Positions 14,362 through 54,358 of a stretch of DNA of 64,000 bases are shown here, one piece after another. The stretch is from Octopus bimaculoides (taxonomy: Eukaryota). The DNA lies in assembly GCF_001194135.2 (NCBI RefSeq), contig NC_069004.1:9372255-9436254 (forward strand), given 5' to 3'. The first letter of the stretch is position 1. Each line of letters begins with the position of its first letter. A program made the position numbers and the translations under genes. The notes beneath the pieces are model-generated. The model saw nothing but the letters and a program-made list of their open reading frames with translations, had not been told where the DNA came from and did not search any database.

Positions 14362-14410
<49 letters not shown>

Positions 14411-14558
14411 ATACATATATGTATGCATACACACACACACACACATATATATATATGACACACATATGTATATATATATATATAAATATATATACATCTG
14501 TATATTTTTACATATATATATGTATACATATAACACATATATATTTTTTGTATGTGTC

Positions 14559-14646
<88 letters not shown>

Positions 14647-15419
14647 AATGAGTCATGCCCACTAACATTGCTGCCATGTAACAACTCACATCAATCCATC
14701 GCCATGCAGATACACACACACGCACGCACACACACACATGTGCATGCACACTCCGCTATGCACACCCATTCTGCTCTCACTTCTACTAATCCGCTTTCTT
14801 CTCAACAACAGCTTCTTACTGTTGTTACCAATGATGAAGGCTCTGTGTTGTTTCGAGACTTGTGTAGAACGGAAGGCCTATGACACAGTCATGACAATGA
14901 GGGAAGCCTGTTTGTCTGCCTGTCTGTTTTTTGGATGTTATTTAGTGTATCTGTGTGCGTGTACGTGTGTGTGTGTGTGAGTGTATTTGTGTGGTGTATT
15001 TGTATGCTCACATTTTTGCGGATGCTTGTATGAGCAAGTGTACTCGTGCCATGCAGTTTGCCCGAGGGTGTTTATACATCCATACCTCTTAACGGTTATT
15101 TTTAATACTTTTCTCGCTGGATTGTGCAATCATTTCTCTTTTTGTCATCTGTGATTTTATTTTTGATCTTCTATATAAATGAAGATATTTCCTCCATCTG
15201 CCTGCTTTTCTCTCTACAAAACAGAAAGTTACATTGTGGAACAGTAATTTTAATAAGTTGTATTTATCTATCACCCGATGAGATACATCTGCACCACCGG
15301 ATGCTCCTGAACCAGTGGCTGAGTATCCCACCCAAGAGGAATCGATGCTAAATGTGTCGAAACAATTGTCGTGATTAATAATAAATTCTCATATATTCCA
15401 TCTTCTGTCTTTCATTTGC

Positions 15420-15456
<37 letters not shown>

Positions 15457-16668
15457 TTTTAAAATTTTTTTTAATTATTTATGCGCCCTTTCAAAACCTA
15501 GCCAGGCTCATGGGCCCAGTTTCCATGGCATATGTGTTCCCCCCAGCTGGACGGGATGCCAGTCCATCGCAGCGTTACTCAGGAAACAGGAAGAAAGAGT
15601 GAGAGAAAGTTGGGGCAAAAGAGTACAGCAGGGTTCACCACCATCCCCTGCTGGAGCCTCATGGAGCTTATTCATATATGTGATGGTATAAACACACATA
15701 CACGCTTTTACATGTGTCTGTGCGATTGCACATGAGTTTGTGCGTGTGTGTGTGTGCGTGCGTGCATGTGTAATGTATAGTGCTGCATACATCCGATATA
15801 GACAGGAATGTAAGGCTATCTTCTGGACATGGCAGGTGTATTTAATGAACAATTTAGAACTATTTACAGTTCAGTGATATCAGAGAGAAAAAAAATATGA
15901 GCTGTGGAGTAAACTGTGTAGTTTAGATATTTTCTTGAAGTAAACTGTGTTTTACTTCAAGAAGCAAAAAAACCAAAAAAAAACCACCACTGTACACAAC
16001 TATTCACAAGTTATGACTGCGTGGTTAAGAAGCTCACTTTGCAGCCACAGTTTTGGTTTCAATCCCACTGCATGGCACCTAGACCCAAGCCAAGCAATGT
16101 CTGGTGAGTGAATTTAGTAGGCAAAAACTGTGTGTGAGTTCAAATTCTTTGGGGATCGACTTTGCCCTTCATCCTTTTGAGATCGATGAAATAAGTACCA
16201 GTTATGCACTGAGGTCGATGTAATTGACTAACCGCCTCCCCCAAAGTTTAGTAGAAGAAGCTATGTGTTTGTGTATGTGTCCTTGTCTCCCCACCCCACC
16301 TGACTGTTGGTGTTGGTTTGTTCGTGTACCTGTAACTCAGTGGTTTGACAAAAGAGACTGATAGAATAAGTATTAGACTAAAATATATAAGAACTAGGGC
16401 AGCACCCCCAACATAGTCACATTCCAAATAAAGATGAATGATACTTTTCTATGCTATGCTGTGACACCACCCTGAAGGGTTTAGTTAATTAAATTTTCTA
16501 TTATAAACATATAAACTAATCTGACAGTCCTCAGTCAAACCATCCAACCCATGCCAGCATGGAAAGCGAATGTTAAAAGATGATGATGATGATATAGATA
16601 GATATATACATGTATACATACGCATATACATATAAACATATAAAGCATACATAGATGTTTGTGTGTAC

Positions 16669-16700
<32 letters not shown>

Positions 16701-16907
16701 GGAGGAGACTTTGTAGCAGTCTCTTTTGTAAGAATGAGAGTTGAAACATCTGACCATCTTCAGGAAAAAACAAACTGAATGTATTTAATCTGTTTGAAGT
16801 ATTGAGTTCTTTTTTATTGTTGATTACTATGAGTATTCATTTAGCATTCCTCTCTCCATCCATCTGTGTGGTCTACCTGCATCCCCCTCCTGTTTCAGTG
16901 TGTGCAC

Positions 16908-16962
<55 letters not shown>

Positions 16963-18233
16963 TATCTCTCTGTATCTAAATGTTCTATGTATATATGTAT
17001 AAATAATATAAGACTAGCTATCTGTCTATCTGCATATACACGTGCTTCACACATCCATATATATATATATATATATATGCATACACATACAAAGAGAGAC
17101 ATATGTATCTATATAGAGAGGGAGGAAGTAAAATGTGTCTTCTTTTACATATGCGCACACACACGTGTGTGTGTATATATATATATACATATATACTATA
17201 AACTATTTTACCTCAATATATACATACACATAACATCCAATTTAACTAACATTATTCCATTTATCTAAACACACCTGACCCAACTGAGAACTTCTGACAA
17301 AATAGCCTCCAGTGCCCCTTAGATGATTGGAAAAGGAAAAAGAATAATACTAACAAATAAATAAGATAACATAAAATATGAATAAAAAAAATGTAATAAA
17401 ACAGTAAAAAGAAAGAAAGCATGTTAGTTGGCTTTCAACCAAGAAGCTAGTTAAATGAATCCATACCCCCATGGGTTTACTAAACCATTTCAAATTCATT
17501 GCCGATATATAATAGATAATAGCTGGTCTCAGGTGATGCTAAGTTCATAAAGCTAGAAGAAAATGTTTGATATGAAGATATGTTGGTGTTGTAAGGGGCA
17601 GGAACGAGAAGGTGAGGTGTTATATCTGAGAGATTAATAACTCCATTGCTGTCATCATCATAATCGTCATCACCATCATCTCTATCATAATCATAGCTCC
17701 TGCCATTGATTAGCGAAGATTTTGTGACGTCAGTAGTTGAGGGCACAGGTGTGTTGAACTGTCGGTTAATAGTGATGATTTAATACTCCTCACCGTCGTT
17801 CTATGAAAACTTTTTGGAAAGTGTCTGAAGCGACCAGGTGTGAAGATCTGCCATCATCACACTTGTTTATTAATTTTGTGCATTTACTTATCATCATTAA
17901 CATCACTATTTACATAGTGTATATATGCATACACATTTATACATATGTGTGTGTGTGTGTGTGTATACATACATATAAATACATATACATTTATATATAT
18001 ATATATAGTAAAGTCTATTTGCCAACACAATGTGGAAGTCCTACACAATATGATGTTACTACTTTTTAACCCCAGGAAAACATCTCTTCCAGCTGGCTAC
18101 TGACACATAGTCTGCATCCATATATATATATTAATGTATATGCATTTATACCTATGTACACACACACACGCATGTGTACACATATGCATTTATATATCTG
18201 TGTGTGTGTGTATACATCTTTCTCTCTACACAT

Positions 18234-18283
<50 letters not shown>

Positions 18284-19282
18284 AGACAACTCAACATGTG
18301 TAGAAATATAAACATGCATTGCCCCATTACATACAATTGTTAGATCATCTGTTATGGGTCAATGATTACCAACATTCTACAAAACTCAGGTAAGACTCAC
18401 AATAGAGTATCAACCATAATTAATTAGAGATACAAAGCTGACGAACTGGCAGAATTGTTAACATGTCAGACAAAATGCTTAACAGAATTTCTTCTGGTTC
18501 TTTACATGCTGAGCTCAACTTAGCCTTTCATCTTTTCAGTGTAAGACAAAGTACCAGTCAGATACTGGGGATCTATGTAATCAACTATCCCCTCTCCTCA
18601 GAATTCCTGGCCTTGTGCCCAAATAAAAAAGAATTAATTAGAGATATGACCAGGAAAGTGTAAAACTTTGCATCCGTATATCTTATTGAAATCTTTAAGC
18701 TTTCTTATTTCACTGTAATACTTTTGGCAAATGGATGAACCCCACCACTTCTTTTCCTTCCACAATATGGCAACATTATTGCAAGTGTCAATCAAGGAGA
18801 TAGCAAAGTCAATAGTCTTATATTCCTCTTGTACAAAACATGTTTAATTTCATTAAATGAAATGCATTATGGAAATATCACCTGACATACATGCAAGATA
18901 TTGCATGTGACTTGTGCACAATAACAGCAGCTAAATAGTGTCAGCTAGTGCCAGGGGCAATAGGTTGGCTGTCACATGTGCACCAGTTCTAAAATGCAAT
19001 GATCTGTTTTAATAAGAACTTGGAGTAGAATTCTTCAATAGAATACAATCATTTATCAATGATCCAGATTTTTTTAAAATTTCATTTCAACCTCATTTTA
19101 TTTGCAGTGATATTGGCTGCTGTTGTGGCTGTTGTAATGGTGATAGTAATAGCTGATACAGTGGTGGTGGTCGTGGTAGTTGTTGTACTTGCTGGCATGG
19201 TTGCAGTAGTAGATATTGGCCTTATGGTAGTTAGTTGTTATGACACACGCACACACATGTACATTACATATATATATATATA

Positions 19283-19672
19283 TACTCTTTTACTTGTTTC
19301 AGTCATTTGACTGTGGCCATGCTGGAGCACCGCCTTTAGTCGAGCAAATCGACCCCAGGACTTATTCTTTGGAAGCCTAGTACTTATTCTATCGGTCTCT
19401 TTTGCCGAACCGCTAAGTTACGGGGATGTAAACACACCAGCATCGGTTGTCAAGCGATGTTGGGGGGACAAACACAGACACATATACACACACACATTTA
19501 TATATATACATATATACGACAGGCTTCTTTCAGTTTCCGTCTACCAAATCCACTCACAAGGCTTTAGTCGGCCCGAGGCTATAGTAGAAGACACTTGCCC
19601 AAGGTGCCACGCAGTGGGACTGAACCCAGAACCATGTGGTTGGTAGGCAAGCTACTTACCACACAGCCACTC
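19283..19672 (-). mobile_element. SINE family B (tRNA-like head GAGTGGCTGTGTGGTAAG, core GAGTGGATTTGGTAGACGGAAACTGAAAGAAGCC), near full length
   Basis: Other copies: 6760-7052, 20960-21540, 32345-32705, 38925-39280, 45478-45645, 50100-50262 (minus); 40800-40945, 57538-57900, 62085-62510 (plus). Confidence 0.85.
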
Positions 19673-19809
19673 ACACAAGTGTACCTACATACAAACACAT
19701 TGTATATGCATACACACACACACATTCCCAAACATATTATATACTGTAAGTACATACACACATATTCTGGGGTTTTGAGATTCTGACCTTCTGCAAATGT
19801 TATGCCTCA

Positions 19810-19845
<36 letters not shown>

Positions 19846-20324
19846 TAAATACCAAAATAAGCCAACTTTCATTTATATTAAATATTTCATCCGAGAATGT
19901 TGGAAACATGCTAGACTGCAGTCACGCAATGATCGAGAAAATTTATGAGAACAAAGTGAAAGTAATAATGCATTACAGATAAAAGCTACAGCAATTGTTA
20001 AGCAATGCCCTGGTTTAATGACTGAAGCGTAAAGGCTATTGGTAATTTAATTAAAGGATCAAAATCAGTGTGATATGTCCATTAGTCTTGGTTTAGTGAA
20101 GAAAACCAAAAAGCTCAGATCCTTTTCAGTGGATTAAAACTTGGACAAGTAGCAAGCAAAGGTGATAATGGGGAAGAATTTGGTTCAATCATTCTAACCC
20201 TTTTCATACCAATCTATCCGAGACTTCTCTGAATTATGTGATACAAACTTCTGACTTTAAAGTGGTCTGAATTAAAACTTCCCATCGCAATTTTATGTTG
20301 ATATAGGTTTCAAACACCAGCTTA

Positions 20325-20780
20325 TCATCATCATCATCATCGTTTATCGTCTGCTTTCCATGCTAGCATGAGTTGGACGATTTGACTGAGGACTGGTGAT
20401 CCAGATGGCTACACCAGGCTCCAATCTGATTTGGCAGAGTTTCTACAGCTGGATGCCCTTCCTAACGCCAACCATTCCGAGAGTGTAGTGGGTGCTTTTA
20501 CGTGCCACCAGCACGAAGGCCAGTCAGGCGGTACCGGTAACGGCCACACTCAAAATGGTGTTTTTTACGTGTCACCTGCACAGGAGCCAGTCCAAGGGCA
20601 CTGGCAACGACCTCGCTCGAATGACTTTTCACGTGCCAGGAATGCAAAGCTGTGACACAAGTGCCTGGAAGGCTATGCTGGTAACAATCATGCTCGAAAG
20701 GTGGTGCCATCACGATTTCGCTTTCGCTTGCCCCAACAGGTCTTTGCAAGCAGAGTTTAGTGTCCAATGCAGGAGACAAA
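20325..20780 (-). mobile_element. Retroposon family D with (GAT)n tail (RTE-like 3' end or derived SINE)
   Basis: (CAT)n-...-ctttccatgctagcatg...tttctacagctggatgcccttcctaacgcc block. Also at 4660-4750, 6590-6730, 8690-8885, 16505-16590, 24670-24870, 26600-26820 and 47400-47590. Confidence 0.75.
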
Positions 20781-23064
20781 GCTCCTTCCTGAGTCACATA
20801 CACTCATAGGGCTTGATCCTCTAGCATATATATACGACCCCTGGATGGGATGCCAGTCTGCTGCAGGAATACTCACTTTTTGCCAGCGGAGTGGACTGGA
20901 GCAACATGAAACAAAGTGTGTTGCTCAAGAACACAACACAGCACTCAATCAAGCAGTGACAGGGGGAAAACGCAGATATATACCTATATATACACGACAG
21001 GCTTCTTTCAGTTTCTGTCTACCAAATCCACTCACAAGGTTTTGGTCAGCATAATGTTATAGTAGAAGACATTTGTCCAAGGTGCCACACAGTGGGATTG
21101 AACCCAGAACCATGTGATTGGGAAACAAGTTTCTTACCACACAGCCATGCCTGTACCTATATATATCTTTATCTTTTATCTCTTACTTGTTTCTGTCATT
21201 AGACTGTGGCCAAGCTGAGGTACCATTTAGAAGAGTTTAAGTCAAACAAATCAACTCCACTACTTATACTATCAGTCTCTTTTACTGAATCTTAAGGTAT
21301 GGGGACAAAAACAAACCAGCACCGGTTGTCAAGCAGTAGGAAAACAAACACACTCACACACACACACATATATATTTACATATGCATGATGAGATTCTAC
21401 AGTTTTCTGTCTACCAAATTTACTCACAAGGCATTGGTGGGTCTGGGGCTATAGCAGAATACATCTGCCCAAAAGTGTTACACAGGGGCCTGAAGTCAGA
21501 ACCACGTGGTTGCAAAGCAAAATTCTTAACCATACAACCTTGTCCACACCTGTGACAGACAGACAGACAGACAGAGTTTGATTTTAAAAACCTTAAAAAT
21601 AATGACGAAAATTATAAAGCAAGAAAAAGAGATAAAAAAAAAAAAACCAAAGTAAAACACCCAAAGCATAGTTTATTGACACTGATATCATCATCATCAT
21701 CATCATCATCATCACTGCCATTGTCGTTATCATCATCATCATCATCANNNNNNNNNNNNNNNNNNNNNNNNNNNNNNNNNNNNNNNNNNNNNNNNNNNNN
21801 NNNNNNNNNNNNNNNNNNNNNNNNNNNNNNNNNNNNNNNNNNNNNNNNNNNNNNNNNNNNNNNNNNNNNNNNNNNNNNNNNNNNNNNNNNNNNNNNNNNN
21901 NNNNNNNNNNNNNNNNNNNNNNNNNNNNNNNNNNNNNNNNNNNNNNNNNNNNNNNNNNNNNNNNNNNNNNNNNNNNNNNNNNNNNNNNNNNNNNNNNNNN
22001 NNNNNNNNNNNNNNNNNNNNNNNNNNNNNNNNNNNNNNNNNNNNNNNNNNNNNNNNNNNNNNNNNNNNNNNNNNNNNNNNNNNNNNNNNNNNNNNNNNNN
22101 NNNNNNNNNNNNNNNNNNNNNNNNNNNNNNNNNNNNNNNNNNNNNNNNNNNNNNNNNNNNNNNNNNNNNNNNNNNNNNNNNNNNNNNNNNNNNNNNNNNN
22201 NNNNNNNNNNNNNNNNNNNNNNNNNNNNNNNNNNNNNNNNNNNNNNNNNNNNNNNNNNNNNNNNNNNNNNNNNNNNNNNNNNNNNNNNNNNNNNNNNNNN
22301 NNNNNNNNNNNNNNNNNNNNNNNNNNNNNNNNNNNNNNNNNNNNNNNNNNNNNNNNNNNNNNNNNNNNNNNNNNNNNNNNNNNNNNNNNNNNNNNNNNNN
22401 NNNNNNNNNNNNNNNNNNNNNNNNNNNNNNNNNNNNNNNNNNNNNNNNNNNNNNNNNNNNNNNNNNNNNNNGACAGACAAAATACTGCCAAGCATTTAGC
22501 CCAGATGCTAAGAATTCTGCAAGCTTGCTGCCTTAGGAGAATTGATAATAATAATAATAATATTAATAATAATAACAATAATACTAATAATAATAATAAT
22601 TATGGTTTCACATTTTGACACAAGGCCAGCAATTTTGAGGAAGAGGTAAGTCAATTACTCCTATATGGACCCCAATGTTCAACTGGTACTTATTTTATCA
22701 AATCCTCAAGGATGAAAGGCAAAGTCAACCTTGGCAGAATTTGAACTCAGAACGTAAAGGCAGACAAAATACCGCCAAGCATTTTAGCCCAGCGTGCTAA
22801 TAGTTCCTTCCGCTCGCTCACTGCCTTAGGAGAATTTGATGATAATAAGATTAATAATAATAATCCTTTCTATTTATAGGTTGAAGGTCTGGAATTTGTG
22901 GGGAGGGGATAGTTGATTTCATTGACCCCCTCGCCCCGACCCCAGTACTTGACTGGTACTTAATTTATCGACCCTCAAAGGATGAAAGGCAACAATGGAC
23001 TAAATGCAGCTAAGCATTTTGCTCAGTGCTAACAATTCTGCCAGCTCACTGCCTCAGGAGAATC

Positions 23065-23103
<39 letters not shown>

Positions 23104-23425
23104 TATCATTATTATTATAATATAATAATAATTATTATTATCATTATTACCATAATTATCAACAAAGGAGTTTCATCGTTTACTTTACGCATTCCCNNNN
23201 NNNNNNNNNNNNNNNNNNNNNNNNNNNNNNNNNNNNNNNNNNNNNNNNNNNNNNNNNNNNNNNNNNNNNNNNNNNNNNNNNNNNNNNNNNNNNNNNNNNN
23301 NNNNNNNNNNNNNNNNNNNNNNNNNNNNNNNNNNNNNNNNNNNNNNNNNNNNNNNNNNNNNNNNNNNNNNNNNNNNNNNNNNNNNNNNNNNNNNNNNNNN
23401 NNNNNNNNNNNNNNNNNNNNNNNNN

Positions 23426-23482
<57 letters not shown>

Positions 23483-23491
23483 GCATGTATA

Positions 23492-23523
<32 letters not shown>

Positions 23524-23738
23524 CATATATATATGTACATATTTTGATGTGGGTGTGAATATACATTGCATATATATATATGTGCGTGTTAGTATGTATA
23601 TATGTATGCAAATTTATAAATATATCTCTATATGCCTGTGTATGTAAGTGTGCGTGTGTGTATGTATACATACATACATACAGACAGAACGATGTGTTTC
23701 TTGTTTGGCCTGTTGTCACATCCACCAAAATGGCTGTG

Positions 23739-23932
23739 CTACCTTCTTTTCTCTCCTTTCTGGGTACGTTTCTTCTCGTTTTCCTTCCTCTCTTGGCGTT
23801 TGTTTTTCTGTGCTTCGCGGTCCTGTTTGTCCTTCTCCTTCTTCTTCTCGTTCTCCTGCTTCATCTTCTCCCGCATCTCTTTCTCCTGCCTCTGAATGCT
23901 GTCCCGGTTCATGTTAGCCAGCAGAGGCATCG
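23739..23932 (-). CDS. CCDC43: CCDC43 coding exon 5, C-terminal charged coiled coil (MPLLANMNRDSIQRQEKEMREK...KRQERKENEKKRTQKGEKRR*)
   Basis: The C-terminus closely matches vertebrate CCDC43 (KQERKEKEKKRTQRGERKR). U12 branch TCCTTAAC then tgtttgaaag|; TAG stop at 23741-23739. Confidence 0.92.
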
Positions 23933-24953
23933 CTTTCAAACAGTTAAGGAGTCCAAGACCGAAAAGAAATAGCAACCGGACACACGTGACCAGCGAGGGG
24001 TAGGGAGAAAGAGTAGCAGAGGTAGAAGAAGGGGAGGAAGTAAAATATAAGTTAGCAACGAGAGGTAGAGAGGGAATGGTCTGTGTATTACAGCATACGT
24101 AAGTGTTAAAGCATACCTACGCGTGAGGTCGCATGGCCCAGCGGTTAATGTGTTGCACTAACAATCATGAAATTGTGGTTTCAATTTCAGGACCAAGTGG
24201 AGTGTTGTGTTCTTGAGCAAAACACTTTGACACCCAGCATGTGGTACACTGTGCATCTGTTCAGGCAACGTCGATTTGATGGAGGAAGTGAGAGAATGTA
24301 CTGCACATGCATTTGATGACTATAAATAAATCATTTATACAGCTTGTTTAGCAAAAAACTGCAGAACCATCTTTCTCAGATGAGAGCCTACGATCACATT
24401 ACAGCTGAGTTCTACACAATTGTGTTAACTTTATTTCTATTTCTAACAAGAATACATTCTATTTTTTGTGCCAGGTAACCAGCAAACTTGAGTCAAGCAG
24501 AGTAATGTACCTTATACAATGTGTGTGTGTATACAGACGTCTCCATACCTTCTGCTTGTTTCAGTCACCAGACGGTAGCCCTGAAGGGTTTTAGTTGAAC
24601 AAATCAGCCCCATAAAGTGACAGTATGATGTCAACTTAATGTGACAGTCCCATATATGTTATGTGTGCATGTTTGCATTTTGCCAGTGCATGACAATCGT
24701 AAACAAATGTCACCGTCATACAACCAGTCATTTGTTTCCAATCTTCCATGAAAATATGTCAGGCCATAAGAAAAATTTACCTTGCTTGGAAACTGGTGAG
24801 GGTTAGCAACAGGAAGGGCACCCAACTATAGAAATCTGGTTTATGTAAGTATAGGAAAGAGGACATTAAAATGATGCTGAGAATCATGTTTGGAGGATGT
24901 GGAAATGGTAAATGGCTGAAAGTAACAAAAGAATTTATTAGAAAAAAGGATAC
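23933..24953 (-). other. CCDC43: U12-type GT-AG intron, CCDC43 intron 4
   Basis: 5'SS GTATCCTTTT at 24953-24944; branch point TCCTTAAC at 23950-23943, 10 nt before the exon. Confidence 0.88.
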
Positions 24954-25078
24954 ATGTAACTGGGTTCAAATTGTTGCTACCGGCAGCAGAAGCTGCAGGG
25001 ATCAGGTTTGCTATGTTACCTGGGACAGAAGTATTGGCTCCTGACTGAATGGGTTCCGGTTCTGATAGTTCAATTCCC
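24954..25078 (-). CDS. CCDC43: CCDC43 coding exon 4 (GIELSEPEPIQSGANTSVPGNIANLIPAASAAGSNNLNPVT linker)
   Basis: 125-nt open exon preceded by the U12 branch site TTTCCTTGAC-tatccctcag| and followed by the U12 donor T|GTATCCTTTT. Phases 2 to 1 exactly bridge exons 3 and 5. Confidence 0.85.
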
Positions 25079-25125
25079 CTGAGGGATAGTCAAGGAAACA
25101 ATTAAAAAAAAAACGAAAAAAAAAA

Positions 25126-25167
<42 letters not shown>

Positions 25168-25794
25168 TGCACATATATATATATATGCATGTATGCACAT
25201 ACAACAAGGAAAGAAAAGAGTCATAAAAAAAAAATTCAAAAACAAGTGGGGATATTAACATTTGTTTTTTTTTTGTTTAAATAACTATTTTTAACATAAG
25301 CAGAAGAAACTGGTTCCTTATTTTACCAAGCAAAGAAGGATGAAAAGCAGAGCTGACCTTAACCTGGATTGAACCATTCATCTAACAAACTGTAGGAAAA
25401 CGCCTGCCTGTTCGTCCATCCATCCTTTCTTTCCTTCCTCACCACTCACTATTCCTAGGAGGGCCACAGAGGTAGAATGCTCAGGTATCTCTGCACAAAA
25501 GCCCCATCAGAAGCAACTGCCATGGCACTTTCCTGCTGGATTTCCAAACATGACTGACACTATGGATATTATCCAACCGCATTGCTTTTGGTTCACCCCA
25601 AGGTCTCCTGCTGGTTGGCCCTGGTTTGAAGAATCTGTTTTGCAATCCTTTCCTGCAGCATTCTAACCCCATATCTGTAATATTGTGGCATCCATTGTTC
25701 AAATTAGCAAATATTGGTAGCTCGATACATTTCTAAATAAATATATATATATATATATATCATTTAACGTCCGCTTTCCATGCTAGCATGGGTT

Positions 25795-25830
<36 letters not shown>

Positions 25831-26268
25831 GTATGTATGTGTGTATTCTTTTACTTGTTTCAGTCAGAATTGAAATATGAATGGGTTGGCTATGTATGCA
25901 ATTCTGTCTTACATGCAGGTCATAGGTGGAGAAAACTGGGATGAATAAACTACAGTAACAACAAAAGCAATTCTGAACACTTGTCTGAGATTAGCGAACA
26001 GAAAGGTAGCAGCGTGCTTATGTATGGTGAGTCATCTAACCATCAAATATCGACTTCAGTCAAATATGAATTGCTTCCCTTGATCATTTGTTTTTTTTTC
26101 TATTCGATTCGTATGTGTGCGAGTGTGTAAACACACATACACAAACAAACACATACTCACACATCCATACACACATCATGACCCTCTTAATACAAATATC
26201 TCCACTACCACACACTCACTCAGACACACACACACAAAAAAGCCTCTAATACCAATTACTAAGGATAC
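25079..26268 (-). other. CCDC43: U12-type (minor spliceosome) GT-AG intron, CCDC43 intron 3
   Basis: 5'SS GTATCCTT at 26268-26261; branch point TTTCCTTGAC at 25098-25089, 10 nt before the exon. Confidence 0.85.
25470..25700 (-). mobile_element. LINE (RTE-like) C-terminal remnant within CCDC43 intron 3
   Basis: PGPTSRRPWGEPKAMRLDNI resembles the degenerate G-x-R-P-x-G-R-P-x-x-R-W-x-D end motif of LINE ORF2. Confidence 0.45.
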
Positions 26269-26434
26269 TGGTCAGCTTCATCACAGACTGTAGAGTACTG
26301 CACCAATATGGCACGTTTCTGGGCCAATTCCTCTTCACTGAGTTGTTTGGCTTTCTTCTCAGTACAACTGGTCACAACATGTGTATTAGTGAGCATTTTG
26401 GACAGCCGTTCATCCAGGGGTGTCTTGTTGGGTT
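26269..26434 (-). CDS. CCDC43: CCDC43 coding exon 3 (EPNKTPLDERLSKML...LSEEELAQKRAILVQYSTVCDEADQ)
   Basis: Acceptor tatctttcag|AA in phase 1; ends CA|GTATCCTT (U12 donor). Aligns to vertebrate VSEEEKQRKAALLAQYADVTDEED. Confidence 0.9.
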
Positions 26435-27189
26435 CTGAAAGATACATAATGCACATGTATAGAGAGAGAAACAAGCTAACAGGAGGAATGAGAATAGAGA
26501 AATAGATAGATCAATATGGTAATAGTGGGGTACATGGATGAGGTACTGGTGGGGTACATTGGTATAGAGAAATCAGTCAGTGATGTACCAGTAGGGTACA
26601 TCATCATCATTTAATGTCCCTTTATCCACGACAGCATAGGTCAGATAGAATACATTGAGACAGATTTTCTAGGGCCAGATGTCCTTCCTATTGCCAAACC
26701 TCAGCCATTTCCAAGCAAGATAATATTTCCCTATGACCAGACATGTTTTGCACAAAGGATTGGAGATGAACAACAACCTTGTTTGTACGAGAACGATGCT
26801 TATTTATAACCATCATGAGATGTCTAGACAAGGCTACACATGCACACAAAACTGAAAAAGCCCACAGTATATATATATATATAATTAAGGCTATAGAAGA
26901 GACAATATGGTCTCTTCTATGCCCTTAATTATAATTGTATTTTATACTATCCTAAATCTCTATGCAGATGCTACTTTTGTGGTAGAAAAGGTTAAAAGAG
27001 GTGAGACTATATCTTTGGATGAGGAGTAGGAATGTGTTAACGAGTGACTTTTAAGGCAATTAATACGGTGGTCTTTCTTTGGATGTGACTTACGATGTTG
27101 GGACGAAATTGTAGAAGGGGGACAACTTAGTTTCACGTGAAACCCGTATACATATTACACACATATATATTGTGTTGAGCCAAATGATT

Positions 27190-27420
27190 TTGCAATATTT
27201 GGTAACTTATTTGTATAATTCGTCGAGTTACAAACAAAAGCAGCCTCACATTTAAAGCAGAGGCCATCGTGTTGCACCGCCTGAAGCCACCTTTCTTTGA
27301 TCCCACGTTGATACCAGTTCTTGTCTCCCGAGGTGAAGAACTCCTTCACTGAATCTTCCACCTTTTTCTTTTTGTTGGTGAAGTGTTACAGGCGCAGGAA
27401 ATAAACCATGGATTGAAACA
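27190..27420 (-). mobile_element. Mariner transposase C-terminal remnant
   Basis: VEDSVKEFFTSGDKNWYQRGIKERWLQAVQHDG matches the mariner C-terminal F-x-x-K-x-x-x-W/F-Y-x-x-GI...RW pattern. Confidence 0.7.
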
Positions 27421-27544
27421 AGTAATAATCCGAGAGAAATAAGTTCAGACTATATGCTGGGTGTGACATCAGTTCAATTCCCTCAAGCTCCTGCAGTTTA
27501 TTCTGGGCAATTATGCAGTATGGGGTCGTGCTGCAGAAGAGCTC

Positions 27545-27830
27545 CCTTTCTTATTTCTTTATTGTCCACAAGGGGCTTAAACATAGAGGGGACAAACAAG
27601 GACAGACAAAGGGATTAAGTCGATTACACCGACCCCAGTGCGTAACTGGTACTTAATTTATCNNNNNNNNNNCCGACCCCAGTGCGTAACTGGTACTTAA
27701 TTTATCGACTCCGAAAGGATGAAAGGCAAAGTTGACCTCAGCGGAATTTGAACTCAGAACGTAATGGCGGACGAAATACCGCTCAGCATTTCGCCTGGTG
27801 TGCTAATGCTTCTGCCAGCTCGCCGCCTTT
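27545..27830 (-). mobile_element. Family-A SINE in CCDC43 intron 2
   Basis: Reverse complement of the 41425 copy; interrupted by a 10-N gap. Confidence 0.8.
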
Positions 27831-28029
27831 GAAAGTGAGAAGAGCTCACTTTCTATTAACCAATGTCAGGTATTTTTGTCATACAATGGCATACATTGAC
27901 TCTAGCTGTAAGGAGTAACAAGCTGGCATCAATAGCTCAACCATCGAAATGAACTCATAGTGAATTATCCCCTCAAAATTTCCACCAGATGCAGAGCATC
28001 ACCTTGTGTTTGAAATGCCCAGGTTTAGA

Positions 28030-28225
28030 GACAAGTTCCTGAAGCTGGTACTTGCTTAACCACTGTTTATGCACGTTAGGAAAGCAGAAAAATATTTTCC
28101 TTGGATATTACTTGCTCTGATCTATGGCTCCTGTCACTTCAACCAAGAGAAGGGGAAAGCTTCAGTGAAGGAGTCCTTCGCCTTCAAGGGCAAAAACTGG
28201 TATCAGTGTGGGATCGAAGAAGCAC
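28030..28225 (+). mobile_element. Mariner transposase C-terminal remnant (opposite orientation)
   Basis: ASVKESFAFKGKNWYQCGIEE; nucleotide similarity to the reverse complement of about 27290-27400. Confidence 0.6.
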
Positions 28226-28350
28226 ACAACAGCAAGGGGGTGGGTATTAAAATTGGCAACAGATTAAGTCTAACACTTTTGGTGCTTACCTGGAAAAAAA
28301 TTTAGCTTTTAATAAGAAAATGGAAAAAAAAAATCCTGAAAGTTGCTTAC

Positions 28351-28435
28351 CCTTTTTGTTTTCTTTGGAATCTACATTACACATCTCATCCCATTTCTTT
28401 ATCACTTCATCACAGATTTCTTCTTTAGAGTCTTC
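28351..28435 (-). CDS. CCDC43: CCDC43 coding exon 2 (EDSKEEICDEVIKKWDEMCNVDSKENKK)
   Basis: Found by manual reading; not in the ORF track. Acceptor tttgtttcaatttcag| and donor G|gtaagc; 85 nt, phase 0 to 1. Peptide aligns to vertebrate EEDSLLNICKEIVERW. Confidence 0.88.
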
Positions 28436-30721
28436 CTGAAATTGAAACAAACAAACTGGTTTAAGAACAACAATGAAATGGAAATGTTCTGTGATTGTTA
28501 AACGGATCTGTCAATGGACTGACTCCAAGACTATTCCTTCTCCAAGCTATTGCAAAAGTATAATGCCTCTGGTCACATGTGATACACAGACAGGACCCTC
28601 CTACACCAACAAAGCAGAATCTACAGACATACAGAAGCAGAGACAGACTCATAGCTAGATGAATGTATCACCATTATGTCATCTATTCTTCAGACATTGC
28701 TACATAACCACTCCAATGCTGTTTAAATCTCCTAAAAAAATCTCAACTGGCAAAAATGAACTGTACCTGTATTTCAAAGGGTTGGCCTTGTCACATTCTA
28801 TGTCATGCTGAATCTCCCCAAGAACTACATTAAGGGTATGTGTGTTTGTGGATTGTTCAGCCACTTGCGTGTTAATTTCACAAGCTGGCTGTTCCATTGA
28901 TCAGATCAACTGGAACACTAGTCGTCATAACCAATAGAGTACCAGTTCATGCTGCACTACATTCACCTCATTAGTGCATGTCAGAGTGTGACACAGTGTA
29001 AATGAGAAAAATGTTGCTTGGCTGACTACCTGCATACCATAGGGCTGCTCAACCAATGCTGAGCTGGTGGAAGGTACATCCTAAAAATAGTCTACAATTA
29101 TGGTCCAGACAAACATAAAACTGACACAAACAACAGCATCAATAAGAACTACAGCTATTATATCCTCATTGTATCTATCTTGCTAGTCTTAGCTGTGGCC
29201 ATCGTCTAATGCACCATTGCATGTCAGGGTGTCCAATATGGTTCTTACCTAGGCTTGTGGCGTGGTATATTTGAACTGAGAAATTTGTTGTCCATGCAAA
29301 GTTGTTCAGTTAACTTTACCTCTTTCCAGTAGATCTACACATTTTCAAACACTATAGTTTATCTTGTTATCAAAGACTGACGTTACACAAATAACAACAG
29401 GTAAACAGTGATAATAGACAGGCAGAGTGGAGAAATAACACCAGGCTTCCATCACTGCACACGTTATATGGAATACTGGATGCAGAATGTACTCTTGTGT
29501 TGAGCGTTATAAACAGGAGAAAAGCCATAAGAAACGGTGCCATTGTGGTAACATTTCATTTTTACTTCAACCAACTACCGAGTTTCAAAGTGTCACCTTG
29601 GGGTACTTACTCTAGTCCTACGAAGATTTGAACCAGGTAACTACGGGTAAACGAAACATTTAGTCAATTATTTAATGTCTCCTCTATTTCAGTGAAGTAC
29701 ACCGACCTATGATATATTCTATTTGAACATGGTATGGATCCGAAGAGTGAGCGACCAGCTGAAGAAAACATACAGACAATTGCATATCTTCGAAGCTCAT
29801 AACTCTATCACCATATGGTACGGATTTATTTCCGGTCATGTGAAGATATAAATACAACTCCGCGAGATAACAACACCTTGGACAGTTTGTATATTATCGT
29901 TATCGTCAATGATTTCCACCTATCTAATCAAAAAGTCGGTGACTTTTGTCATGAAAGAAAAACATTGGTTAAATATTTTGTTTATGTTTGGGGAAGGTGT
30001 TTCACGCTTGAGTCCTGAGTAAAAGACTACACTCGATTGGTTCTTCAACGCTACATTCTCACTCACTGCCTCCCCTAACCCACTTCGTTTTCACCTGAGA
30101 ATCATATAAGTAAACACGAGGATAGCAAGAGAGATTCTTTATGGTTGCTCGACTTGCTAAAAATAGCAGCCAAATCGACTACCCCTCCTTACTCAAATTA
30201 CATCCCATCGTCTTAAAAAAAGGTGGGGGCACATTGGATAATATGGTCTTAAAACAATGGATAGTCTCAGCTGCAAGCCTTCGATCCGAGCTCACCTGAG
30301 GGCTAAACAAAAATTAACAAGACCGTTTAATTAAACAGAGAAAAGAAAAGAGATAAAGAGAGTCTGAAGGACCAAGAATTTGTGTGGATTTGAAAAAGAA
30401 TAAACTGATAATTTGACAAAAATAAGGCGATGAGGGTTTGTTTCGAAGTCTCTCAGAAAAATAGCATTCCGTCCAGTAAGACGGAATGCCTTTTCTTGCT
30501 ATCTCATATAAAGAATAGAATCGTACAAGAATGGAAGATAACCAAATTAGCAAAGAATTTTAAGGTAAGATTTAAAGAGAGAAACCTACACAGAATAAAA
30601 CAATGTTTTCTTTTACTAAAATGCGTCATAAGCATTAGGGTAAATACAATTTAAGAGCGTATATTTATGTATATATGTGTGTGTGTGCGTATAATGTAAT
30701 ATGAATAAGATAAGTTGTATG

Positions 30722-30810
<89 letters not shown>

Positions 30811-31055
30811 AATATGTTACGTTGTTTAGCCTTAACATAGACCTATGTACAAAGGTGTTCCAGTAGTGACCATCCGTCTTAGAGTGTAATTCCACTGTCC
30901 GATTGTATTCTTTTTTTTAAGACAAAAAGGAGTGATTTGAGGGCGGTTTAGTAGCTATTTCTGTTAGGTTGTGCGACCAAGAAGGGGAAAGTTCTTGGCT
31001 TATACCTACGTGATGATATATTATAAGATGTGTATCTGTGTGTGAAATACCGTAC

Positions 31056-31241
31056 CGCTATTTCCCCGACGATGTCCAACAGGGAGTCCTTCTTCTCATC
31101 ATATCCGCTGTACGACTCGAGGATGCCATTGATGTACGTGACAAACACACCGGCATCAAGATCGTCATTTAATTGCAGCAGTCTCGTCTCCAGCCATCGT
31201 GTAAAGCCATCAGAGTCATTACACATGGATACAGCCGCCAT
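31056..31241 (-). CDS. CCDC43: Coiled-coil domain-containing protein 43, coding exon 1 (MAAVSMCNDSDGFTRWLETRLL...LLDIVGEIA)
   Basis: Peptide resembles the CCDC43 N-terminus (F-x-x-W-L-x-x-R-L, VF-x-x-YI-x-GIL). ATG at 31241; donor GCG|gtacgg in phase 0, matching exon 2. Confidence 0.88.
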
Positions 31242-36623: not shown

Positions 36624-37166
36624 ATGTCGTTCTGTTTACCATACCTCAGGCTTTACCGCCATCTCTCAGCATTCACAGCTCTGTGTCAAAGACATTTTCA
36701 ACTGGGACAGATTCATTCGCTCAAAGTGACCCCTGCCCTTCCTCTGGTCAGAACGGCTGCAACAAAAGCTGCAAAGCATGAAGTAATAGTTTCACAATCA
36801 ACGTGTATCTTTGAAAACCTTTCTCTGGAAGAATGGCTATTCGAAAACACAGACTTGGAAAATACATCTTATCTGTTGATCTGGCGAAACACTGAAACGG
36901 TTGTGATTGGGCGGCACCAGAATGCTTGGATTGAAGCCAATGTGCCACTGCTGGAACAGAAAGGTGTCAGCATTGCACGCAGGAACAGTGGCGGAGGAAC
37001 CGTTTACCATGATCTTGGCAACATCAACTTCTGTTTCCTAACATCGCGTGAACGATACGACAGAAAGTGGAACCTGAATCTTGTGACCGAGGCTGTTAAC
37101 GATCAGTGGATGTTAAATCTCAGTGTGAATGCCCGAGATAACATCATGTGGAATGACATGTTTAAG
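36624..37166 (+). CDS. LIPT1: Lipoyltransferase 1, mitochondrial, coding exon 1
   Basis: Contains LplA/LIPT1 motifs: ENLSLEEWLF, LLIWRN-x-x-x-VVIGRHQNAWIE, ARRNSGGGTVYHDLGNINF. N-terminus resembles a mitochondrial presequence. Donor AAG|gtgagt, phase 0. Confidence 0.96.
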
Positions 37167-38095
37167 GTGAGTAACCAAGAATGTTATTTTGGTTCTTTAT
37201 TAGTCAGTATGTCATAGACATTGTGACCTTGTCACCATAAATGATACCTTTGTACAAACATACCAACCACTTGAGGCTTGTTGCAGTTGTCCACGCTTTC
37301 AGGTATTTGCGACAGAAGTCAAGCGACAAATGTACATTACATGTCATTTATATGATTTCAAGTATGTTTTTTTGTAAATCTTTGTAACCATGTTACGAGT
37401 GAAATACATTGCCTTTCCTTTATGAAAGACAAATTTGATTCCTGTTCAATTTAAACTCTGACCATTAGGAAACAATGTTGAAATTATTGTGTCAACCAAT
37501 ATTATGAATGACATGTCCACCGACACTCATGTTCAGTCAACACTACCAGTGTTGACTGAACGACTGTACTGTTGGACAAAATGCTTCGTGGCATTTCATC
37601 TGTCTTTACATTCTGAGTTCAAATGCTGCCAAGGTCAATGTTGCCTTTCATCCTTTCAGTGGTTGATAAAATAAGTACCCATTGAACCCTGAGGTCAAAG
37701 TAATTGTCTTCTCACCTTCACTGAAATTACTGGCCTTGTGCCAAAATTTGAAACAGTCATTAAGGTGGTGAGGCAGCAGAATCATTAGCTTGTTGGACAA
37801 AAGGCTTAGTAGCATTTTGTCCAGTTTTACATTCTGAGTTCAAATCCCACCAAGGTCAGCTTTGTCTTTCATCTGTTGAGGCTATTACAATATCATAGAG
37901 AGTTAAGCTAGGTTACTAGGCTACATCTACGTGACCTCTGATGTATAATTTTGGCCAGCAGTTGTGAGTTTTGAGCCTACATTGAGTGCATTGGATGCAG
38001 GGGGATTTTTAAACCCATTTTTGGGTAAAAAAAGGTGTGTCTTACAGGCCATCAAATATGGATGTTTTGCGTCCTTGTCCCATTTTGTATTATTT

Positions 38096-39280: not shown

Positions 39281-39544
39281 TGTGCCTTTAAAGATGTTTG
39301 CTGAGCAGTCACCCATCTAAGTACTAACCAGGCTCCTTATTGCTTAACTTCAGTGACCGGACAAGAAACCCTTTTGTTACCAAATTTCTGTTGAAATGCA
39401 CTACCACTGGAACATATACAACCCCAGTGAGAGTTGAACTTGGTATGTAAATGGACTAAGCTAAATACAGCAGACCAGACTATTTAGTCTCATATTTTAC
39501 CATTCCTGCTTCTTTTAATGCCCTTTAACAATATNNNNNNNNNN

Positions 39545-42209: not shown

Positions 42210-42626
42210 CCAACATCCATTGAATTCCTCGACCTTAAGAAAGACCGGAGCCGTTTTCCTGGTTTAGATAAAATCTTAGAAAATCGCTTGGACTGGAAAT
42301 GGATTTTTGGCAAGACTCCAACTTTTACTTTGGATCGTCATTTCATCACACACTGCTACCAATCCAGAGAGACTTGCTTAAGGATCCACTGTAAAATTCA
42401 AGATGGCTGCATTAACACGTTAGATATCCAGTTATCTCCCTTAGACCAAAAACTTGATAGACTCGCTTCCTCAACAAAAAATGCTTTACTGACAGAAAGA
42501 CTTAGCGGAAAACATTTACAACCAGTTTTTGAAAGACTGCGTCAGAATTTTTCTGAAGTCAAGGAAATATCACCACATCTTTTAGATTGGTTTTTAAATA
42601 GCTTATGGGTGACTTTTTTTGGTTGA
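42210..42626 (+). CDS. LIPT1: LIPT1 coding exon 4 (PTSIEFLDLKKDRSRFPGLDKILENRLDWKWIFGKTPTF...FFG*)
   Basis: Acceptor ttttctaatccag|; in frame with ORF 42288..42626. FPG...W-x-WIFGKTP-x-F motif of the C-terminal domain. Spliced CDS is 1206 nt = 401 aa plus stop. Confidence 0.92.
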   Translation, partial: PTSIEFLDLKKDRSRFPGLDKILENRLDWKWIFGKTPTFTLDRHFITHCYQSRETCLRIHCKIQDGCINTLDIQLSPLDQKLDRLASSTKNALLTERLSGKHLQPVFERLRQNFSEVKEISPHLLDWFLNSLWVTFFG

Positions 42627-46200: not shown

Positions 46201-46379
46201 AACAGAGATATCACATGCAACAATGAGGTTTACCATGACAAAAGTTGTGTAATACTATGAGCAATTAGTTAAGGAAGAAGAAAAAGAGAAAGACGTTTAT
46301 ATTCGTGAATCTGTTGTACATGAAATGCTGGTAACTAGAATAGCAATAGAAAGTGGATTCATGATCGTTCACACATATA

Positions 46380-48015: not shown

Positions 48016-48395
48016 GTCGTATAAGAGAACAAAACGAATATCCTACCCCTGCCCTACCCATACCTACTACCCTGCCATTCCTCTCACCCCACCCCAATAT
48101 CCTTCTCACCTTCACAACAACTTTACCTGAAGAAGTTTCCCATTTGGTACCGCCACTCTTATCATAACATTGTCCAGCCTCCAAGACCAACTGACCTTAT
48201 AACCCGTCTGACCACTTTCACTTTACACTGTCCTTGTAATGTTGGTTCATCCGAACAAACCCAACACCCCGCCCCATGTAATAAACCCCGCCCCGTGTAA
48301 TAACCTCCCCCTCTCCCCCACCTTCACTCACACTGTTGGCTGTACTCAGGCCAAACAATAGATTGATTGACCGTTACCATTTCAGAAGCTGATTG

Positions 48396-53048: not shown

Positions 53049-53281
53049 ATTTGTATTTATGTGTGTGTGGTATATATATATATANNNNNNNNNNNNNNNN
53101 NNNNNNNNNNNNNNNNNNNNNNNNNNNNNNNNNNNNNNNNNNNNNNNNNNNNNNNNNNNNNNNNNNNNNNNNNNNNNNNNNNNNNNNNNNNNNNNNNNNN
53201 NNNNNNNNNNNNNNNNNNNNNNNNNNNNNNNNNNNNNNNNNNNNNNNNNNNNNNNNNNNNNNNNNNNNNNNNNNNNNNNNN

Positions 53282-53876: not shown

Positions 53877-54358
53877 CGGTGGTTGTAGTTCTGGTGGTGG
53901 TGGTGGTTGTTGTTTGTTGTTGTGGTGTAGTTGTTGTTGTTGTGGTAGTGGTGGTGGTGGTGGTAGTAATTGTTGCTGTTGTGGTGGTAGTGGTTGTAGT
54001 TGTGGTGGTGGTCGTAGTGGTAGTGGCTATGATTGTAATGGTGGTGGTGGTGGTTGTAGTGGTTATGGTTGTGGTGGTAGTGGTTGTTGTGGTAGTGGTT
54101 ATGGTTGTGGTGGTAGTGGTTGTAGTTGTAGTGGTGGTCGTAGTGGTAGTGGCTATGAGTGTAATGGTGGTGGAGGTGATTGTAGTGGTTATGGTTGTGG
54201 TGGTAGTGGTTGTAGTTGTGGTGGTGGTGGTGGTGGTGGTTGTAGTGGTAGTGGTTATGGTTGTGGTGGTAGTGGTTGTAGTTGTAGTGGTGGTGGTTGT
54301 GGTAGTAGTTGTGGTTGTTGTGGTGGTTGTCGAGATGGTAGTCGTAGTGGTGGTGGTA
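53877..54358. repeat. Compound (GGT/AGT/TGT)n trinucleotide array with higher-order ~30-bp units
   Basis: Read directly; source of the poly-V, poly-T, poly-H and GCS-rich ORFs. Confidence 0.95.

What the first reader, a model, noticed from the sequence alone, without database searches (positions are those of the whole stretch)
23933..26268. Two consecutive U12 minor-spliceosome introns isolate a 125-nt exon in CCDC43
Seen: intron 3 begins GTATCCTT and has branch TTTCCTTGAC 10 nt before the exon. Intron 4 begins GTATCCTTTT and has branch TCCTTAAC 10 nt before the exon. Only these sites give an open 251-aa CCDC43; standard GT-AG calling would probably mispredict exon 4. Established: U12 introns are a small fraction of introns and usually occur singly per gene; adjacent pairs are uncommon and can be rate-limiting. 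Inference: the gene is strongly dependent on the minor spliceosome. I do not know for certain whether both introns are U12 in vertebrate orthologs.
Basis: partly seen in the sequence, partly recalled or inferred. Interest (0 to 1): 0.7.

Follow-up and report, generated by a model that had tools for sequence, protein, structure and literature searches.

The report
Conserved pair of U12 introns in CCDC43
The octopus CCDC43 gene does have two neighbouring introns of the rare "minor spliceosome" type around a 125-base exon, but the same pair occurs in the same places from scallops and scorpions to sharks, lizards and humans, so it is real and already known rather than new.

Summary
On the minus strand, intron 3 (26268-25079) and intron 4 (24953-23933) both start with GTATCCTT. 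Both carry a U12 branch-site motif (TCCTTGAC, TCCTTAAC) with the branch A 11 nt from the terminal AG. They flank a 125-nt exon (25078-24954). The five-exon model gives a 251-aa protein identical to the public Octopus bimaculoides CCDC43 (XP_014789563.1), so these junctions are already annotated.

I mapped orthologous proteins exactly onto their own genomic loci. The same two introns, at the same positions and phases (2 and 1), are U12-type in nine other species. They are GT-AG + GT-AG in four molluscs and a scorpion. They are AT-AC + GT-AG in a starfish, an acorn worm, a shark and a lizard. Published sashimi plots show the same AT-AC + GT-AG pair in human CCDC43, plus a "hybrid" intron that skips the exon. 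A crab has lost both.

Splicing by the minor spliceosome in octopus is therefore inferred from motifs, deep conservation and mammalian data.

Verdict: a real, ancient and previously documented arrangement. Interest is low.

The parts
31056..31241 (-). CCDC43 coding exon 1 (ATG at 31241-31239; 186 nt; ends in phase 0)
   Evidence: Same exon border in all orthologues mapped.
28436..31055 (-). Intron 1, ordinary U2-type (GTACGG...TTTCAG), 2620 nt
28351..28435 (-). Coding exon 2 (85 nt; ends in phase 1)
26435..28350 (-). Intron 2, ordinary U2-type (GTAAGC...TTTCAG), 1916 nt; contains a 10-N gap at 27663-27672
26269..26434 (-). Coding exon 3 (166 nt; ends in phase 2)
25079..26268 (-). Intron 3, U12-type GT-AG, 1190 nt, phase 2
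   Evidence: 5'ss CCA|GTATCCTT and branch site TCCTTGAC 11 nt from the 3' end. The orthologous intron is U12-type in 9 other species.
26261..26268 (-). U12 5' splice-site motif GTATCCTT of intron 3
25089..25098 (-). U12 branch-site motif TTTCCTTGAC of intron 3 (branch A at 25090)
   Evidence: The last ~45 nt of the intron are identical in O. sinensis.
24954..25078 (-). Coding exon 4, 125 nt (3n+2). It encodes a poorly conserved linker (GIELSEPEP...NLNPVT). Skipping it shifts the frame.
23933..24953 (-). Intron 4, U12-type GT-AG, 1021 nt, phase 1
   Evidence: 5'ss CAT|GTATCCTTTT, branch site TCCTTAAC 11 nt from the 3' end, no polypyrimidine tract. The orthologous intron is U12-type in 9 other species.
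24944..24953 (-). U12 5' splice-site motif GTATCCTTTT of intron 4
23943..23950 (-). U12 branch-site motif TCCTTAAC of intron 4 (branch A at 23944)
   Evidence: The motif is kept in O. sinensis while its flanks have diverged.
23739..23932 (-). Coding exon 5 (194 nt including the TAG stop at 23741-23739). It encodes the conserved basic C-terminus ...EKKRTQKGEKRR.

Best explanation
The window comes from Octopus bimaculoides and carries the five-exon CCDC43 gene on the minus strand. Introns 3 and 4 are U12-type (minor-spliceosome) introns of the GT-AG subtype.

Inferred mechanism: each intron is recognised by the U11/U12 di-snRNP, with U11 pairing with GTATCCTT and U12 pairing with TCCTTRAC about 11 nt from the AG, and is removed by the minor spliceosome. 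Exon 4 (125 nt) is therefore bounded on both sides by minor splice sites. Making the full-length 251-aa protein requires two minor-spliceosome reactions.

The pair is not an octopus peculiarity. It is an ancestral bilaterian feature of CCDC43, kept at the same positions and phases in molluscs, a chelicerate, echinoderm, hemichordate and vertebrates, and already documented in human.

Because the intron phases are 2 and 1, the enclosed exon is always 3n+2 nt long. Joining the intron-3 donor directly to the intron-4 acceptor (a 'hybrid' U12 intron) skips the exon and shifts the frame. In this window that gives a stop after six codons.

What is shown: the motifs, their spacing, the gene model and the orthologous conservation. 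What is inferred: actual removal by the minor spliceosome in octopus.
For: - Exact motifs and spacing.
- Both 5' splice sites are poor U1 sites (CCA|GTATCC, CAT|GTATCC; no AG at -2/-1). Intron 4 has no polypyrimidine tract.
- The 251-aa product is identical to XP_014789563.1 / UniProt A0A0L8FIB7, CCDC43 of O. bimaculoides, and 93% identical to O. sinensis CCDC43 X1.
- Orthologous proteins were mapped exactly onto their own genomic loci. Intron 3 (phase 2) and intron 4 (phase 1) begin [AG]TATCCTT in all nine orthologues. Most have a clear TCCTTRAC-like branch motif 8-16 nt from the 3' end; a few matches are weak (Centruroides intron 3: 5 of 8).
  - GT-AG + GT-AG: O. sinensis, Argonauta hians, Pecten maximus, Aplysia californica, Centruroides sculpturatus.
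  - AT-AC + GT-AG: Patiria miniata, Ptychodera flava, Scyliorhinus canicula, Podarcis raffonei.
- Introns 1 and 2 in the same genes are plain U2-type, which serves as an internal control.
- Between the two octopus species the 3' end of intron 4 has diverged, with indels, yet TCCTTAAC is retained.
- Human CCDC43 has an AT-AC intron followed by a GT-AG minor intron, plus a hybrid AT-AG intron joining the first donor to the second acceptor (bioRxiv 10.1101/2020.08.06.239418, Fig. S11 legend).
- Mouse Ccdc43 is listed among minor-intron genes with increased alternative splicing after U11 loss (bioRxiv 10.1101/2020.05.18.101246).
- O. sinensis isoform X3 joins exactly the U12 donor of intron 3 to the U12 acceptor of intron 4.
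- 83% of human minor introns are reported as conserved in octopus (bioRxiv 10.1101/2022.09.24.509304).
Against: - The junctions rest on the public protein model and on orthology.
- intronIC or another trained classifier was not run.
- GT-AG termini do not by themselves exclude some use by the major spliceosome.
- Intron 3 has a T-rich run just upstream of its branch motif.
Confidence: 0.93

Rival explanations
1. The U12-like motifs are chance matches, and the introns are ordinary U2-type GT-AG introns removed by the major spliceosome.
For: Window-wide counts of each 8-mer are at chance level. Both introns have GT-AG ends. Intron 3 has a T-run upstream of the branch motif.
Against: - The motifs sit exactly at both donor sites and 11 nt upstream of both acceptors. 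The naive joint probability is about 1.6e-14.
- The same motifs are present at the same two intron positions in 9 other species, while introns 1 and 2 never have them.
- The orthologue of intron 3 is AT-AC in four deuterostomes, and the major spliceosome does not normally handle that class.
- The donors match U1 poorly.
Confidence: 0.02
2. The gene model is wrong at exon 4. Under this reading the 125-nt exon is not normally included, and the main product joins exon 3 to exon 5 or uses other sites.
For: - The public O. vulgaris model (196 aa) and O. sinensis isoform X3 (217 aa) skip the exon.
- Many other GT/GC..AG combinations keep a frame open.
- No reads were available here.
Against: - Skipping shifts the frame and destroys the most conserved part of the protein, the C-terminal ...EKKRTQKGEKRR block found from fungus to vertebrates.
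- Inclusion gives the exact public O. bimaculoides protein.
- An exon of length 3n+2 lies at this place in all nine orthologues that keep the two U12 introns.
- Proteins from short Logan contigs of other cephalopods (P0006: 232 aa on a 957-nt contig) carry the linker and the in-frame C-terminus. I infer these contigs are spliced transcripts because the contig is far shorter than the gene.
Confidence: 0.03
3. The pair is a lineage-specific (cephalopod or mollusc) gain of U12 introns rather than an inherited feature.
For: In protostomes intron 3 is the GT-AG subtype, unlike the AT-AC subtype in deuterostomes. A crab has neither intron.
Against: Identical position and phase in protostomes and deuterostomes on the protein alignment. 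Subtype switching between AT-AC and GT-AG at a conserved U12 intron is a well-known process (my own knowledge of the literature, not checked here). The crab pattern fits loss.
Confidence: 0.02

Closest known systems
Human and mouse CCDC43 introns 3 and 4 (two consecutive minor introns)
   Same: Orthologous gene with two adjacent U12-type introns flanking a short exon. An exon-skipping 'hybrid' U12 intron joins the first donor to the second acceptor (human; O. sinensis X3). The shark and lizard loci examined here show the vertebrate arrangement directly, at the same positions and phases.
   Different: In deuterostomes the first intron of the pair is AT-AC, whereas in octopus it is GT-AG. The enclosed exon is 125 nt here against 56-59 nt in shark and lizard, and its sequence is not conserved.
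CCDC43 of Octopus sinensis, Argonauta hians, Pecten maximus and Aplysia californica
   Same: Same five-exon structure. Both introns start GTATCCTT, with a TCCTTRAC-like branch site.
   Different: Intron lengths differ (1.0-1.2 kb here against 4-7 kb in O. sinensis), and the exon 4 length ranges from 80 to 134 nt.
[quoted passage not shown]
   Same: U12 introns cluster in the same genes more often than chance would give. Human has 45 genes with two U12 introns against 6-16 expected (PMC1557818). Clustering was confirmed in 21 genomes (PMC7367187).
   Different: I did not establish how many of those pairs are directly adjacent. In CCDC43 the two introns flank a single exon, so that exon has minor-type sites on both sides.

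Membership tests
U12-type (minor-spliceosome) intron | 5' splice site matching |[AG]TATCCTT | tested here: met
   Intron 3 has GTATCCTT at 26268-26261 and intron 4 has GTATCCTTTT at 24953-24944.
U12-type (minor-spliceosome) intron | Branch-site motif TCCTTRAC close to the 3' splice site (about 8-20 nt) | tested here: met
   TCCTTGAC at 25096-25089 and TCCTTAAC at 23950-23943. In both the branch A is 11 nt from the last intron base.
U12-type (minor-spliceosome) intron | Poor fit to U2-type signals (weak U1 complementarity, no AG at -2/-1 of the donor, weak or absent polypyrimidine tract) | tested here: inconclusive
   By inspection only. The donors CCA|GTATCC and CAT|GTATCC fit U1 poorly, and intron 4 lacks a pyrimidine tract. 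Intron 3, however, has a T-run upstream of its branch motif. No quantitative U2 score was computed.
U12-type (minor-spliceosome) intron | Orthologous introns at the same position and phase are U12-type in other species | tested here: met
   Nine species covering molluscs, a scorpion, a starfish, a hemichordate, a shark and a lizard. Human from the literature.
U12-type (minor-spliceosome) intron | Score above threshold in a trained classifier (intronIC or a U12DB-style PWM) | not tested
   The classifier and its matrices are not available here. Introns listed as U12-type by intronIC in PMC7367187 include weaker motif pairs, such as GTATCTTTTT...GTTGCCTTGACA.
U12-type (minor-spliceosome) intron | Observed spliced junctions, and dependence of splicing on U11/U12/U4atac/U6atac | not testable with these tools
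Only mammalian orthologue data from the literature are available.
CCDC43 protein family | Full-length sequence homology to CCDC43 (PWI_CCDC43 PF26091 plus CCDC43_C PF27916) | tested here: met
   The product is identical to XP_014789563.1. The top hits are all CCDC43, down to E = 2.5e-144, and carry both precomputed Pfam families. The local Pfam copy gave no hit; I presume it lacks these recent models.

The most novel reading that the evidence does not exclude
The exon enclosed by two minor introns may be a conserved splicing switch rather than a conserved piece of protein. Its sequence and length drift freely (47-134 nt), but it is always 3n+2. It is always flanked by U12 sites, and it can be skipped through a hybrid U12 intron, as seen in human and in O. 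sinensis isoform X3. Skipping removes the conserved C-terminal domain. Bilaterians might therefore tune CCDC43 output through minor-spliceosome exon definition. The evidence here does not exclude this reading, and it does not test it either.
Probability: 0.1. Interest if true: 0.5.

Novelty: already known. Interest (0 to 1): 0.15.

Why it matters
This is a clean, textbook-quality example of two adjacent minor introns kept in place across bilaterians. It also has a practical consequence: gene callers that ignore U12 signals produce frameshifted or scrambled CCDC43 models, as in the O. vulgaris and cuttlefish annotations.

It adds no new kind of biology. The junctions are already in the public O. 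bimaculoides protein, the pair is documented in human CCDC43, and genome-wide surveys already report that most human minor introns are conserved in octopus.

Two modest new details:
- Intron 3 is the GT-AG subtype in the five protostomes examined and AT-AC in the four deuterostomes.
- A crab has lost both introns.

Tried and rejected
- The cuttlefish genomic locus (P0007), wanted for mapping a protein from a short Logan contig onto it, was not on record. That used the last locus look-up, so no cnidarian or sponge outgroup could be examined.
- The local Pfam scan of the 251-aa protein gave only noise.
- An Rfam scan of the whole window at gathering thresholds found nothing.
- Phrase searches for 'consecutive/adjacent minor introns' found no papers.
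- The other U12-like motif hits in the window have no properly spaced partner and match chance expectation. They are GTATCCTT at 5609(-) and 44298(+), ATATCCTT at 48097(+), TCCTTGAC at 42558(-) and 44556(+), and TCCTTAAC at 46268(-). The 44298/44556 pair has its only AG 5 nt after the branch A, and I saw no coding exon at its flanks by eye.
- The claim that only these sites keep the frame open was rejected.

Full report
**What is in the sequence.** The gene lies on the minus strand.

- Exon 3 ends at 26269.
- Intron 3 starts at 26268 with GTATCCTT and ends with AG at 25080-25079.
- TTTCCTTGAC occupies 25098-25089, so the branch adenosine (25090) is 11 nt from the last intron base.
- Exon 4 runs from 25078 to 24954, which is 125 nt.
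- Intron 4 starts at 24953 with GTATCCTTTT and ends with AG at 23934-23933.
- It has TCCTTAAC at 23950-23943, with the branch A (23944) again 11 nt from the end.

**Gene model.** I located the remaining exons by translating the minus strand.

- Exon 1 is 31241-31056, exon 2 is 28435-28351, exon 3 is 26434-26269, and exon 5 is 23932-23739 (TAG stop at 23741-23739).
- Joined with exon 4, these give a 756-nt CDS of 251 aa.
- Introns 1 and 2 are ordinary U2-type introns (GTACGG, GTAAGC, pyrimidine-rich 3' ends).
- Intron 3 is in phase 2 and intron 4 in phase 1.
- Skipping the 125-nt exon therefore shifts the frame. In this window it runs into a stop after six codons.

**Identity.** The 251-aa protein is identical to XP_014789563.1 / UniProt A0A0L8FIB7, coiled-coil domain-containing protein 43 of Octopus bimaculoides. 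It is 93% identical to O. sinensis CCDC43 isoform X1. The window is therefore O. bimaculoides, and the public annotations already use exactly these junctions.

**Is it more than chance?** Counted over the whole window, the two 8-mers are at chance level: 5 against 4.5 expected, and 5 against 3.4. The signal is in the placement. Two donor motifs and two branch motifs lie on the coding strand, exactly at frame-preserving borders and correctly spaced from the AG. With the window's base composition, a naive joint probability is about 1.6e-14. Identity to the public protein and orthology single out these sites.

**Comparative test.** I fetched the genomic loci of CCDC43 orthologues. I mapped each protein exactly onto its own locus with a small spliced mapper and placed the introns on a protein alignment.

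| Group | Species | Intron 3 + intron 4 |
|---|---|---|
| Molluscs | O. sinensis, Argonauta hians, Pecten maximus, Aplysia californica | GT-AG + GT-AG |
| Chelicerate | Centruroides sculpturatus (scorpion) | GT-AG + GT-AG |
| Deuterostomes | Patiria miniata, Ptychodera flava, Scyliorhinus canicula, Podarcis raffonei | AT-AC + GT-AG |

- In all nine species the third intron (phase 2) and the fourth (phase 1) fall at the same alignment positions.
- Both begin [AG]TATCCTT in every species. Most carry a clear TCCTTRAC-like motif 8-16 nt from the 3' end, though a few matches are weak (for example 5 of 8 in Centruroides intron 3).
- Introns 1 and 2 are plain U2-type everywhere, which serves as an internal control.
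- The enclosed exon varies from 47 to 134 nt, is always 3n+2, and encodes a poorly conserved acidic or low-complexity linker.
- The crab Portunus trituberculatus has only U2-type introns, at different positions or phases. The fungus Coemansia has no introns.
- Between the two octopus species the 3' end of intron 4 has diverged, with indels, yet TCCTTAAC is kept. The 3' end of intron 3 is identical over the last ~45 nt.

**Literature.**

- The legend of Fig. S11 in the CENATAC preprint (10.1101/2020.08.06.239418) describes an AT-AC intron and a GT-AG minor intron in human CCDC43. It also describes a hybrid AT-AG intron that starts at the first donor and ends at the second acceptor.
- Mouse Ccdc43 is named among minor-intron genes whose alternative splicing rises after U11 loss (10.1101/2020.05.18.101246).
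- Genes with two U12 introns are more frequent than chance. Human has 45 against 6-16 expected (PMC1557818), and clustering was replicated in 21 genomes (PMC7367187).
- A pan-eukaryotic survey reports that 83% of human minor introns are conserved in octopus (10.1101/2022.09.24.509304).

**Annotation consequences.**

- O. sinensis isoform X3 (217 aa) joins exactly the U12 donor of intron 3 to the U12 acceptor of intron 4. That is an 11.6-kb hybrid intron which skips exon 4 and frameshifts the C-terminus.
- The O. vulgaris model (196 aa) has the same skipped, frameshifted form.
- The cuttlefish genome model (P0007) departs from P0006, the protein of a short Logan contig, from the exon 3/4 junction onward.

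**Mechanism.**

- Shown here: the motifs, their spacing, the gene model, and conserved position, phase and class.
- Inferred from established knowledge of the minor spliceosome: U11 pairs with the GTATCCTT donors, U12 pairs with the TCCTTRAC branch sites, and the U4atac/U6atac.U5 complex carries out catalysis. Full-length CCDC43 would then require two minor-spliceosome reactions around an exon that has minor-type sites on both sides.

**Verdict.** The feature is real and correctly interpreted. It is an ancestral bilaterian property of CCDC43 that is already annotated in this genome and already documented in human. It is ordinary for this gene. The small additions are the subtype difference at intron 3 (GT-AG in the protostomes examined, AT-AC in the deuterostomes), the loss of both introns in a crab, and the mis-annotated relatives.

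Noticed in passing
window 36624-37217 (+) and 42288-42626 (+): An ORF with a lipoyl protein ligase A/B catalytic domain (LplA-B_cat, E = 2e-30) lies head-to-head with CCDC43, about 5.4 kb from its start codon. A gene with the same Pfam family sits divergently next to CCDC43 in the Pecten maximus and Aplysia californica loci, which suggests a conserved divergent gene pair in molluscs. The 42288-42626 ORF may be a further exon of this gene, but that is unconfirmed: it gave no Pfam hit.
   Followed up: partly
L004, L006, L007, L008 compared with window, L001, L002, L003, L005, L009: The orthologue of intron 3 is AT-AC in the starfish, acorn worm, shark and lizard. It is GT-AG in four molluscs, this octopus and a scorpion, so there has been a U12 subtype switch at a conserved position. 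The direction of the switch is unknown because no outgroup could be fetched.
   Followed up: partly
L011 (Portunus trituberculatus): The crab CCDC43 gene has four U2-type introns and none at the two U12 positions. Its nearest intron lies about 6 codons upstream in phase 0, and the linker exon is fused with the last exon. This is consistent with loss or conversion of both minor introns in this lineage.
   Followed up: partly
L001 (O. sinensis) 11963-23577; proteins P0004, P0005, P0007: Public models in relatives skip or scramble the exon between the two U12 introns. O. sinensis isoform X3 uses a hybrid U12 donor/acceptor pair, O. vulgaris CAI9740230 is the frameshifted skipped form, and the Acanthosepion pharaonis model disagrees with the protein of a short Logan contig (P0006). 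O. sinensis X2 uses an AG 3 nt downstream at intron 4.
   Followed up: yes
window 5078-5416, 12991-13869, 21748-22471, 23197-23425, 27663-27672, 39535-39544, 49836-50073, 50685-50694, 51873-52085, 53085-53281, 55154-55480: There are eleven runs of N (assembly gaps), mostly flanked by (TA)n or (CA)n microsatellites. They explain the low-GC bins in the composition profile. None lies in introns 3 or 4. One (27663-27672) is in intron 2, and one (23197-23425) lies about 300 nt downstream of the CCDC43 stop codon.
   Followed up: yes
window 5609-5616 (-), 44298-44305 (+), 48097-48104 (+), 42558-42565 (-), 44556-44563 (+), 46268-46275 (-): These are further isolated matches to the U12 donor or branch-site consensus. 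None has a correctly spaced partner, and their number equals chance expectation.
   Followed up: partly
window 53878-54357: A long imperfect (TGGTGG)n array with a 21-nt period creates 170-280-aa Gly/Cys-rich and Thr-rich ORFs on both strands. It looks like a microsatellite-type repeat rather than a gene.
   Followed up: partly
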